A program made the position numbers and the translations under genes. This document shows, piece after piece, positions 34,930-36,425 of a DNA stretch of 64,000 bases (position 1 is its first letter; every line of letters starts with the position of its first letter). The notes below the pieces were generated by a model. That model was not told the DNA's origin. It ran no database searches and saw only the letters and a program-made list of their open reading frames with translations. Source of the DNA: Anolis carolinensis (taxonomy: Eukaryota); the NCBI RefSeq assembly GCF_035594765.1, contig NW_026943818.1, positions 20,038,724 to 20,102,723 on the forward strand, given 5' to 3'.

Positions 34930-36425
34930 CTCTTTTCTTTATATAAACTGCTCTCTTGTGGCACTGCACCAATAAATCCCTAGACTCCAATAGCTAATCC
35001 TTTCTATTTATACACTGCCCTCTTGTGGTTGCATCTGAGCATTGCATACATTCATCCCTAGAGGCCAGAAGCTAAACCTTTCTATCTATACACTGAACTC
35101 TTGTGGCTGCATCTGAGCACTGCACCCTTACATCCCTAGAATTCAGTAGCTAATCCTTTCTATCTATACACTGTCCTCTTCTGGCTGCATCTGAGCATTG
35201 CATACATTCCTCCCTAGAGACCAGGAGCTAATCCTTTCTATCTATACACTGTCCTCTTCTGGCTGCATCTGAGCATTGCACCCCTACATTCCTAGAATTC
35301 AGTAGCTAATCCTTTCTATCTATACACTGCCCTCTTGTGGCTGCATCTGAGCATTGCATACATTCATCCCTAGAATTCAGTAGCTAATCCTTTCTATCTA
35401 TGCACTGCCCTCTTGTGGCTGCATCTGAGCATTGCATACATTCCTCCCTAGAAGCCAGGAGCTAATCCTTTTTATCTATACCTTACCCTCTTGTGGCTTC
35501 ATCTGAGCATTGCATACATAGAGGCCAGGAGCTAATCCTTTCTAACTATAGACTGCCCTCTTGTGTCTGCATCTGAGCATTGCATACATAGAGGCCAAGA
35601 GCTAATCCTTTCTAACTATACACTGCCCTCTTGTGGCTGCATCTGAGCACTGCACCCTTACATCCCTAGAATTCAGTAGCTAATCCTTTCTAGCTATACA
35701 CTGTCCTCTTGTGGCTGCATCTGAGCACTGCACCCTTACATCCCTAGAATTCAGTAGCTAATCCTTTCTATCTATACACTGCCCTCTTGTGGCTGCATCT
35801 GAACATTGCATACATTCCTCCCTAGAAGCCAGGAGCTAATCCTTTTTATCTATACCTTACCCTCTTGTGGCTTCATCTGAGCATTGCATACATAGAGGCC
35901 AGGAGCTAATCCTTTCTAACTATAGACTGCCTTCTTGTGTCTGCATCTGAGCATTGCATACATAGAGGCCAAGAGCTAATCCTTTCTAACTATACACTGC
36001 TCTCTTGTGGCTTCATCTGAGCATTGCATACATAGAGCCCAGGAGCTAATCCTTTCTAACTATACACTGCCTTCTTGTGGCTGCATCTGAGCATTGCATA
36101 CATAGAGGCCAAGAGCTAATCCTTTCTAACTATACACTGCCTTCGTGTGGCTGCATCTGAGCATTGCATACATAGAGGCCAAGAGCTAATCCTTTCTAAC
36201 TATACACTGCCTTCTTGTGGCTGCATCTGAGCATTGCATACATAGAGGCCAAGAGCTAATCCTTTCTAACTATACACTGCCCTCTTGTGGCTGCATCTGA
36301 GCACTGCACCCTTACATCCCTAGAATTCAGTAGCTAATCCTTTCTAACTATACACTGCCCTCTTGTGGCTGCATCTGAGCATTGCATACATTCATCTCTA
36401 GAGACCTGGAGCTGATCCTTTCTAA
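34930..36425. repeat. Minisatellite (70/78-bp units, ~19-20 copies) carrying a CTCF-like motif
   Basis: Repeated agctaatcctttctatctatacactgccctcttgtggctgcatctgagcattgca... Confidence 0.93.

What the first reader, a model, noticed from the sequence alone, without database searches (positions are those of the whole stretch)
34930..36425. Intronic minisatellite whose monomer is a bipartite CTCF-like site: ~19 co-oriented sites in 1.5 kb
Seen: on the minus strand a unit reads GTGCAGTGCT-CAGATGCAG-CCACAAGAGGGCAGTG (e.g. 35621-35655). Seven units keep tgccctcttgtgg exactly, and the rest carry 1-3 changes. Established: the CTCF core is approximately CCASYAGRKGGCR, and a subset of high-occupancy sites adds an upstream TGCAG/TGCAA module bound by ZF9-11 at roughly this spacing. 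Inference: a CTCF site was tandemly amplified into a length-variable, unidirectional anchor or insulator cluster pointing towards EIF4H and the LAT2 promoter. It could wall off haematopoietic LAT2 from its housekeeping neighbours or affect splicing of the adjacent small exons. The core lacks CpG, so binding would not be methylation-sensitive.
Basis: partly seen in the sequence, partly recalled or inferred. Interest (0 to 1): 0.78.

Follow-up and report, generated by a model that had tools for sequence, protein, structure and literature searches.

The report
Intronic minisatellite carrying CTCF-type motifs
A 1.5-kb tandem repeat that nearly fills one intron of a reptile LAT2-like gene carries a strong, same-direction match to the CTCF binding motif in every unit, but it belongs to a repeat family found at many loci and nothing here shows that CTCF binds it.

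Summary
Window 34946-36425 is a minisatellite of 19 full units (70 or 78 bp) plus one truncated unit. Each unit has a CTCF-core match on the minus strand. Seven are exact, at p about 3e-8, far above any other site in the window and above 20,000 shuffled monomers. An upstream-type module lies 6 bp before the core, a published spacing class; it matches well in only 5 units.

- Read depth in four individuals suggests the 78-bp unit is multi-locus, about 35-43 times this locus's content. A lone resident CTCF site amplified in place is therefore unlikely. Only the 70-bp subtype and a 374-bp block look locally amplified.
- The core is no better conserved between units than the rest of the unit.
- The array lies inside the LAT2-like gene, about 95% of an inferred 1.56-kb intron. 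It therefore cannot separate LAT2's promoter from EIF4H.
- CTCF occupancy, insulation and splicing effects could not be tested.

First-stage notes list at least six other CTCF-like arrays elsewhere in this genome. These are unchecked, but they hint at a genome-wide class. I found no published description of such arrays in reptiles. I rate interest as moderate.

The parts
34946..36425 (-). Minisatellite: 19 full units of 70 or 78 bp plus one truncated unit at the low-coordinate end. Each unit has a CTCF-type motif on the minus strand.
35621..35655 (-). Best example of the two-part motif (unit 11): TGCAGTGCT, then the 6-bp spacer CAGATG, then a 19-bp core that starts CAGCCACAAGAGGGCAG.
   Evidence: Register checked against published sites; spacing classes.
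35325..35343 (-). One of seven top-scoring cores (p 2.7e-8, or 7.3e-8 for 35013). The others are at 35013-35031, 35403-35421, 35621-35639, 35777-35795, 36275-36293 and 36353-36371.
35893..36312 (-). Run of six 70-bp units (units 2-7), 91-99% alike at offset 70. Contig depth here is low, consistent with local copies only. I read this as a locally amplified deletion subtype.
35250..36044 (-). Block duplication with a period of 374 bp (five units), 91-100% identity: recent growth in place by unequal exchange or slippage. The coordinates are approximate.
34384..34471 (+). Start-codon exon of the LAT2-like gene. It encodes a short N-terminus, a hydrophobic segment and a CMKC motif, and is followed by GTAAGG.
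   Evidence: The gene name is inferred from its position between EIF4H and RFC2 and from remembered LAT2 features.
34567..34609 (+). Second coding exon of the LAT2-like chain (exon B, 43 nt). It has AG and GTAAGT flanks and is open in the phase carried from the start-codon exon.
   Evidence: Inferred, not confirmed by RNA.
34796..34920 (+). Candidate exon, open in the carried phase, with AG and GTAAGC flanks. Its 5' splice site lies 25 nt before the array.
   Evidence: Inferred, not confirmed by RNA.
36481..36511 (+). 31-nt micro-exon with AG and GTAAGT flanks. Its 3' splice site lies 55 nt after the array.
36687..36745 (+). Next exon, encoding ..HYYNC.KF... Read in phase with the micro-exon it gives ..AYVEP...YYN.., which resembles a LAT2 segment as I remember it.
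6791..6809 (+). Best plus-strand CTCF-type hit in the window (score 15.9, p 1.5e-6). It is a possible convergent partner that would enclose EIF4H and the LAT2 5' end. This is speculative.

Best explanation
This is one locus of a lineage-specific minisatellite family found at many places in the genome. The basic unit is 78 bp. A 70-bp deletion subtype and a five-unit block were amplified at this locus by unequal exchange or replication slippage. The array fills about 95% of a short intron of the LAT2-like gene. Every unit carries, in one orientation, a CpG-free two-part CTCF-type motif: a core plus an upstream module after a 6-bp spacer.

Shown here: the array, its motif content and orientation, the local duplications, the flanking genes, and the excess read depth. 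Inferred: CTCF's two-part specificity is essentially the same in lamprey, chicken and human. The 7 exact-core units (p about 3e-8), and probably also the 6 that score p about 4e-7 to 9e-7, should therefore be able to bind CTCF. If the array lies in open chromatin it would act as a multi-site, one-directional barrier to cohesin coming from the LAT2-promoter/EIF4H side. Units lie 70-78 bp apart, which leaves no room for a nucleosome between occupied sites. The array is therefore likely to be either coated by CTCF or wrapped in nucleosomes and silent. The most likely evolutionary status is a neutral or nearly neutral by-product of the family's spread and local expansion, not a site selected to regulate LAT2.
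For: The array and its units are shown. Motif strength: 20 co-oriented hits, 7 at p 2.7e-8, which is the best in the window, and 0 of 20,000 shuffled monomers reach that score. The upstream module and its register agree with published sites: TGCAGTTCC + 5 bp + TGGCCAGCAGAGGGCA, mouse HS-94 and CTGCAGTTCC-like. A 5-bp spacing is commonest and 6 bp is frequent. Specificity is conserved across vertebrates (PMC5504073). More copies and the upstream motif both strengthen enhancer blocking (PMC11417384; PMC12885311).

Multi-locus family: flanks have contig depth about 6-9 (X10: 47-67). Array bins with 78-bp units reach 650-1700 (X10: up to 11,000). Summed over the array, that is about 35-43 times this locus's content in each of four runs from four studies. 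The 70-bp run stays near the depth expected from local copies only. Local growth is shown by the 374-bp block at 91-100% identity and the 70-bp run at 91-99%. There is no extra conservation of the core between units. For context, short-unit tandem families at hundreds to thousands of loci, with alternating subvariants, are documented in squamates (PMC10702118).
Against: No binding, accessibility or contact data were available. Only 5 of 19 units have the better upstream match (7 of 8 specified bases), and 12 of 19 cores depart from the consensus. The depth estimate comes from summed depths of short-read contigs laid at 90% likeness or better. It is rough and could be inflated by partial matches. 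No second copy of the unit lies in the 64-kb window and none was found in metagenome contigs, so no other locus of the family was actually seen. The organism is coded, so I infer a squamate only from its repeats.
Confidence: 0.6

Rival explanations
1. A CTCF site resident in this intron was amplified in place. The array is kept by selection as a one-directional anchor or insulator that tunes LAT2 relative to EIF4H and RFC2.
For: The motifs are strong, co-oriented and two-part. A possible convergent plus-strand site lies at 6791-6809. Published work shows that multiple copies and the upstream motif increase blocking.
Against: Depth suggests that the 78-bp unit occurs at many other loci. The array sits inside LAT2, on the far side of its start-codon exon from nothing but LAT2's own body and RFC2. 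Individual cores decay as fast as the rest of the unit.
Confidence: 0.12
2. The motif is present but never used. The array is packed in nucleosomes or heterochromatin like most young tandem repeats, CTCF does not occupy it, and the resemblance has no consequence.
For: The 70-78 bp spacing leaves no room for nucleosomes between bound sites, so all-or-none occupancy is expected (inference). Known CTCF tandem arrays such as DXZ4 are bound only in one chromatin state (PMC3491370). The cores show no conservation between units.
Against: The core score and the correctly spaced upstream module are unlikely to be chance. The motif has no CpG, so DNA methylation cannot block binding directly.
Confidence: 0.25
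3. The array is a SINE-derived satellite of the kind described in squamates, so its unit is a piece of a SINE.
For: Unit length, multi-locus distribution and alternating subvariants all fit the published description (PMC10702118).
Against: A sensitive BLAST of two units against the rest of the window found nothing longer than 24 nt at 79% identity. The window holds several SINE copies, including a very high-copy one at 36819-37100. No SINE consensus library was available, so this is not a full test.
Confidence: 0.08
4. The array acts mainly on splicing. CTCF bound, or the repeat itself, slows RNA polymerase II between the 125-nt exon and the 31-nt micro-exon and so changes their inclusion.
For: The array starts 25 nt after a 5' splice site and ends 55 nt before a 3' splice site. 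CTCF-dependent polymerase pausing that promotes exon inclusion is established knowledge (CD45 exon 5, from my own memory).
Against: No RNA data were examined. The exon at 34796-34920 is only inferred.
Confidence: 0.07

Closest known systems
DXZ4/Dxz4 and FIRRE-type CTCF-binding tandem repeats of mammalian X chromosomes
   Same: They are tandem arrays whose units each carry a CTCF motif in one orientation, and that orientation governs long-range contacts (PMC3491370; bioRxiv 10.1101/165340).
   Different: Those units are kilobases long, CpG-rich, X-linked and bound only on the inactive X. Here the units are 70-78 bp, CpG-free, intronic and apparently part of a multi-locus family. Binding is unproven.
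CTCF sites spread by retrotransposons (for example rodent SINE B2)
   Same: A repeat family multiplies a ready-made CTCF motif through a genome (cited in PMC5504073; PMC10982698).
   Different: Those are dispersed single insertions made by retrotransposition. Here multiplication is by tandem duplication, and no mobile-element features were found.
SINE-derived satellites (sSat) of squamates
   Same: They are short-unit (67-290 nt) tandem arrays at many loci, often with alternating subvariants and more uniform long arrays (PMC10702118).
   Different: No similarity of this unit to SINE copies in the window. CTCF motifs are not mentioned in the sections of that paper that I read.
Clustered or engineered tandem CTCF sites at domain boundaries
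   Same: Several co-oriented sites that include the upstream motif give stronger enhancer blocking (PMC11417384; PMC12885311).
   Different: Those clusters have 2-4 sites, hundreds of bp or more apart. Here there are 20 motifs at 70-78 bp spacing inside a gene.

Membership tests
Two-part CTCF binding site | Core matching the CTCF matrix/consensus CCASYAGRKGGCR | tested here: met
   20 hits at p<1e-4, of which 7 at 2.7e-8; no shuffle reaches that score.
Two-part CTCF binding site | Upstream TGCAGTNCC-type module 5 or 6 bp before the 19-bp core | tested here: inconclusive
   The spacer is 6 bp in all units. The match is 7 of 8 specified bases in 5 units, 6 of 8 in 13 and 5 of 8 in 1. No matrix for the module was available.
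Two-part CTCF binding site | Occupancy by CTCF in vitro or in vivo | not testable with these tools
   No ChIP, CUT&RUN or EMSA data were available.
Minisatellite / VNTR | Head-to-tail units of about 10-100 bp | tested here: met
Minisatellite / VNTR | Length varies among individuals | tested here: inconclusive
   Both array-flank junctions are present in contigs of four runs, but short-read contigs do not span the array. The joints seen do not equal whole numbers of units.
SINE-derived satellite (sSat) | Unit homologous to part of a Squam SINE | tested here: not met
   No similarity to anything else in the window, SINE copies included. This test is limited because no consensus library was available.
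SINE-derived satellite (sSat) | Many loci in the genome | tested here: inconclusive
   Summed contig depth is about 35-43 times this locus's content in four runs, but no second locus was seen directly.
Insulator / domain boundary | Change of contact insulation or enhancer blocking at the site | not testable with these tools
   No Hi-C or reporter data were available.
DXZ4-type macrosatellite | Unit of a kilobase or more | tested here: not met
   Units are 70 or 78 bp.

The most novel reading that the evidence does not exclude
This reptile genome holds a whole class of minisatellites, at dozens to hundreds of loci, whose units are ready-made two-part CTCF sites. CTCF sites would then have been multiplied here by tandem amplification of a spreading repeat family, not by the SINE retrotransposition known in mammals, and this would create dense one-directional cohesin barriers inside and between genes. 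This locus would be one member of that class. At least six other co-oriented CTCF-like arrays are noted by first-stage readers in about 47 Mb of the same genome, but I did not check any of them.
Probability: 0.2. Interest if true: 0.7.

Novelty: new variant of a known kind. Interest (0 to 1): 0.45.

Why it matters
If CTCF really occupies such arrays, they would be a second route by which repeats remodel CTCF landscapes: tandem, CpG-free and variable in length. Array length would then be a natural dosage series for testing how the number of sites sets boundary strength. It would also extend repeat-driven turnover of CTCF sites from mammals to squamates. If the arrays are not occupied, the locus is an ordinary young minisatellite in an intron. 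It would then stand as a caution that motif-rich repeats can look like regulatory clusters.

Tried and rejected
- Pfam scan of eight open-frame pieces around the array gave no family. The LAT2 pieces are too short or too divergent. The gene name rests on its position between EIF4H (PDB 2DNG, E 2.8e-28) and RFC2 (E 1e-24), on in-phase exons with AG/GT flanks, and on remembered LAT2 features.
- BLAST of two units against the rest of the window found no other copy and no parent element.
- An exact-pattern scan of metagenome contigs for the 26-nt core region was blank.
- A search of earlier findings by sequence was blank.
- Literature searches for CTCF arrays in lizards, Anolis or reptiles found no prior description.
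- Length polymorphism from contig joints was rejected as evidence. The joint at 35397/35622 removes a net 222 bp, which is not a whole number of units.
- Extra conservation of the core, within the array or in contigs from other loci, is not significant.
- I considered a resemblance to the classical G-rich hypervariable minisatellite core. Only GGGCAG is shared, so I did not pursue it.

Full report
**What is there.** Tandem Repeats Finder reports one array at 34976-36425 with period 78 (19.4 copies, 86% matches) and a 70-bp sub-period. Read on the minus strand and split at a fixed anchor, it has 19 full units of 70 or 78 bp. A truncated, degenerate unit reaches down to 34946. The 70-bp units lack 8 bp at the unit end. 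TGCCCTCTTGTGG occurs seven times, only inside the array. The array has one CpG in 1480 bp, observed/expected 0.015 against 0.46 for the window.

**Motif content.**
- The 16-mer CCACAAGAGGGCAGTG has 20 matches with up to 3 mismatches. All are on the minus strand inside the array, against 0.33 expected from shuffles.
The array gives 20 co-oriented hits at p<1e-4. Seven score 21.9 of a possible 29.9 (p 2.7e-8). Six more lie between about 4e-7 and 9e-7, and the rest between 7e-6 and 2e-5. The best hit outside the array scores 15.9.
- None of 20,000 shuffles of the monomer reached 21.9; the maximum was 18.5.
- The only non-consensus base of the core is the A in CCAC-A-AG. A published designed high-affinity site has the same ..AGAGGGCA.. 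core (PMC11194110).

**The upstream module.** Published sites fix the register: TGCAGTTCC, then 5 bp, then TGG and CCAGCAG.... Mouse HS-94 reads CTGCATTACC, then ACAGA, then TGGACAGTAGAGGG (PMC11417384). The human consensus is described as CTGCAGTTCC-like (PMC12885311). A 5-bp spacing is the commonest and 6 bp is frequent (PMC9004084). Here every unit has a 9-mer at a 6-bp spacing (CAGATG) before the 19-bp core. It is TGCAGTGCT in 5 units (7 of 8 specified bases), TGCAATGCT in 13 (6 of 8) and TGCAATGTT in one. Only two units (units 2 and 11) combine an exact top core with the better upstream form. So 'bipartite' is fair, but the upstream half is good in only a minority of units.

**Would this animal's CTCF read the motif?** ChIP-seq in lamprey, chicken and human recovers almost identical core and upstream motifs (PMC5504073). 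A squamate CTCF is therefore expected to have the same specificity. That is inference; no binding data for this organism were available.

**Gene context.**
- Open frames on the plus strand at 14.8-28.9 kb read as EIF4H exons. The piece at 18072-18419 matches human EIF4H (PDB 2DNG) at E 2.8e-28.
- Minus-strand frames at 49.6-54.6 kb are RFC2 (E about 1e-24).
- Between them, on the plus strand, is a chain of small exons with AG/GT flanks that stay open in the carried phase: 34384-34471 (start codon, hydrophobic segment, CMKC), 34567-34609, 34796-34920, then the array, then 36481-36511 and 36687-36745. Exons with Y-x-N motifs follow at 38.2-38.8 kb.
- Position between EIF4H and RFC2, a transmembrane segment followed by a CxxC motif, several YxN motifs, and the ..AYVEP...YYN.. 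junction all fit LAT2 as I remember it. The gene name and the exon at 34796-34920 are therefore inferred.
- On this model the intron is 34921-36480 (1560 bp) and the array fills about 95% of it. The array starts 25 nt after the 5' splice site and ends 55 nt before the 3' splice site.

**Origin.**
- Contigs of four DNA runs of the same organism, from four studies, were laid on 34200-37100. The unique flanks have depth about 6-9 (47-67 in X10).
- Array bins that hold 78-bp units reach 650-1700 (up to 11,000 in X10). The run of 70-bp units stays at 10-40, which local copies alone would give.
- Summed over the array and divided by single-copy depth, the family amounts to roughly 50-60 kb per genome. 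That is 35-43 times this locus, with similar values in all four runs.
- This estimate is rough: it uses summed contig depths at 90% likeness or better. It still argues that the 78-bp unit occurs at many other loci, and that only the 70-bp subtype is local.
- Within the array, a five-unit block of 374 bp is repeated at 91-100% identity, and the 70-bp run is 91-99% uniform. The locus has therefore grown recently in place.
- No copy of the unit, and no possible parent element, lies elsewhere in the window. A metagenome scan was blank.
- Squamate genomes are known to hold short-unit tandem families at hundreds to thousands of loci, derived from SINEs and often with alternating subvariants (PMC10702118). 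This array behaves like those, but I found no SINE homology.

**Selection on the motif.** Across the 19 units, the core has 1.42 minor-allele counts per column, the upstream module 0.56 and the remaining columns 1.62. Most of that last figure sits in a few subtype-defining columns. Twelve of the 19 cores depart from the consensus. The most uniform stretch is TAGAAAGGATTAGCT, not the core. Nothing therefore suggests that individual sites are being preserved.

**Likely working, if bound.** The ZF3/N-terminal side of CTCF lies at the 3' end of the core and faces the domain from which cohesin is stalled (PMC12885311). With the motif on the minus strand, that side faces lower coordinates, meaning the LAT2 start-codon exon and EIF4H. 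The best plus-strand hit in the window, at 6791-6809, would be convergent with the array. Copy number and the upstream motif both raise blocking strength in reporter systems. However, the array lies inside LAT2, so it cannot separate the LAT2 promoter from EIF4H. It would separate both of them from the LAT2 body and RFC2. The 70-78 bp spacing excludes nucleosomes between occupied sites, so I expect all-or-none occupancy (inference). An effect on inclusion of the flanking small exons is possible but untested.

**Wider pattern.** First-stage notes on the same genome (728 windows read) list other arrays of co-oriented CTCF-like motifs. They are in MFSD12, at the PLA2 cluster, around PIP5KL1 exons, between GEMIN4 and TLCD3A, between CHD5 and RPL22, and one of 20 sites 'core plus upstream' 4.4 Mb away. 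These are unchecked AI notes on DNA I could not read, so they are leads only. Together with the depth result they raise the possibility of a genome-wide class. Literature searches found CTCF-binding macrosatellites and SINE-borne CTCF sites in mammals, but no description of CTCF-motif minisatellites in reptiles.

**Verdict.** It is weak on origin and on the 'walling off' role, and it is untested on binding. I rate interest at 0.45 and class the finding as a new variant of a known kind.

Noticed in passing
window 2313-6796: A second, larger minisatellite (77-bp unit, about 52 copies, joined by ATT runs). Forty-nine of its units carry a weak co-oriented CTCF-like hit on the minus strand (CTCCCAACAGAGGGCCTTC, p 5e-5). 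The array ends at the window's best plus-strand hit, 6791-6809.
   Followed up: partly
window 11816-14441: AT-rich arrays with periods of 144-212 bp. The 145-nt period recalls the Squam1-derived satellite reported for the green anole (PMC10702118). I did not compare the sequences.
   Followed up: no
window 37162-38056 and 39141-40884: Two more minisatellites lie in the next LAT2-like introns, with units of 74/120/197 bp and 113/213/326 bp. Neither has a CTCF-type hit.
   Followed up: no
window 36819-37100: An extremely high-copy element: summed contig depth 1e5 to 2e6 against about 7 for unique flanks. It is probably a SINE.
   Followed up: no
window 34588-34684: A short high-copy fragment in the intron just upstream of the array, at depth about 7000 against 7. 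It includes an ACTACAACTCCCA-type stretch.
   Followed up: no
window 26160-26258: A plus-strand open frame reading ..EGNVPNIIIA.. looks like an RFC2 exon piece inside EIF4H.
   Followed up: partly
window 7497-9100 and 15840-16664: Long open frames with reverse-transcriptase-like and related retroelement sequence lie upstream of EIF4H and in its first intron.
   Followed up: no
window 33077-33590: A 261-bp segment is duplicated in tandem (90% identity) about 0.8 kb upstream of the LAT2-like start codon.
   Followed up: no
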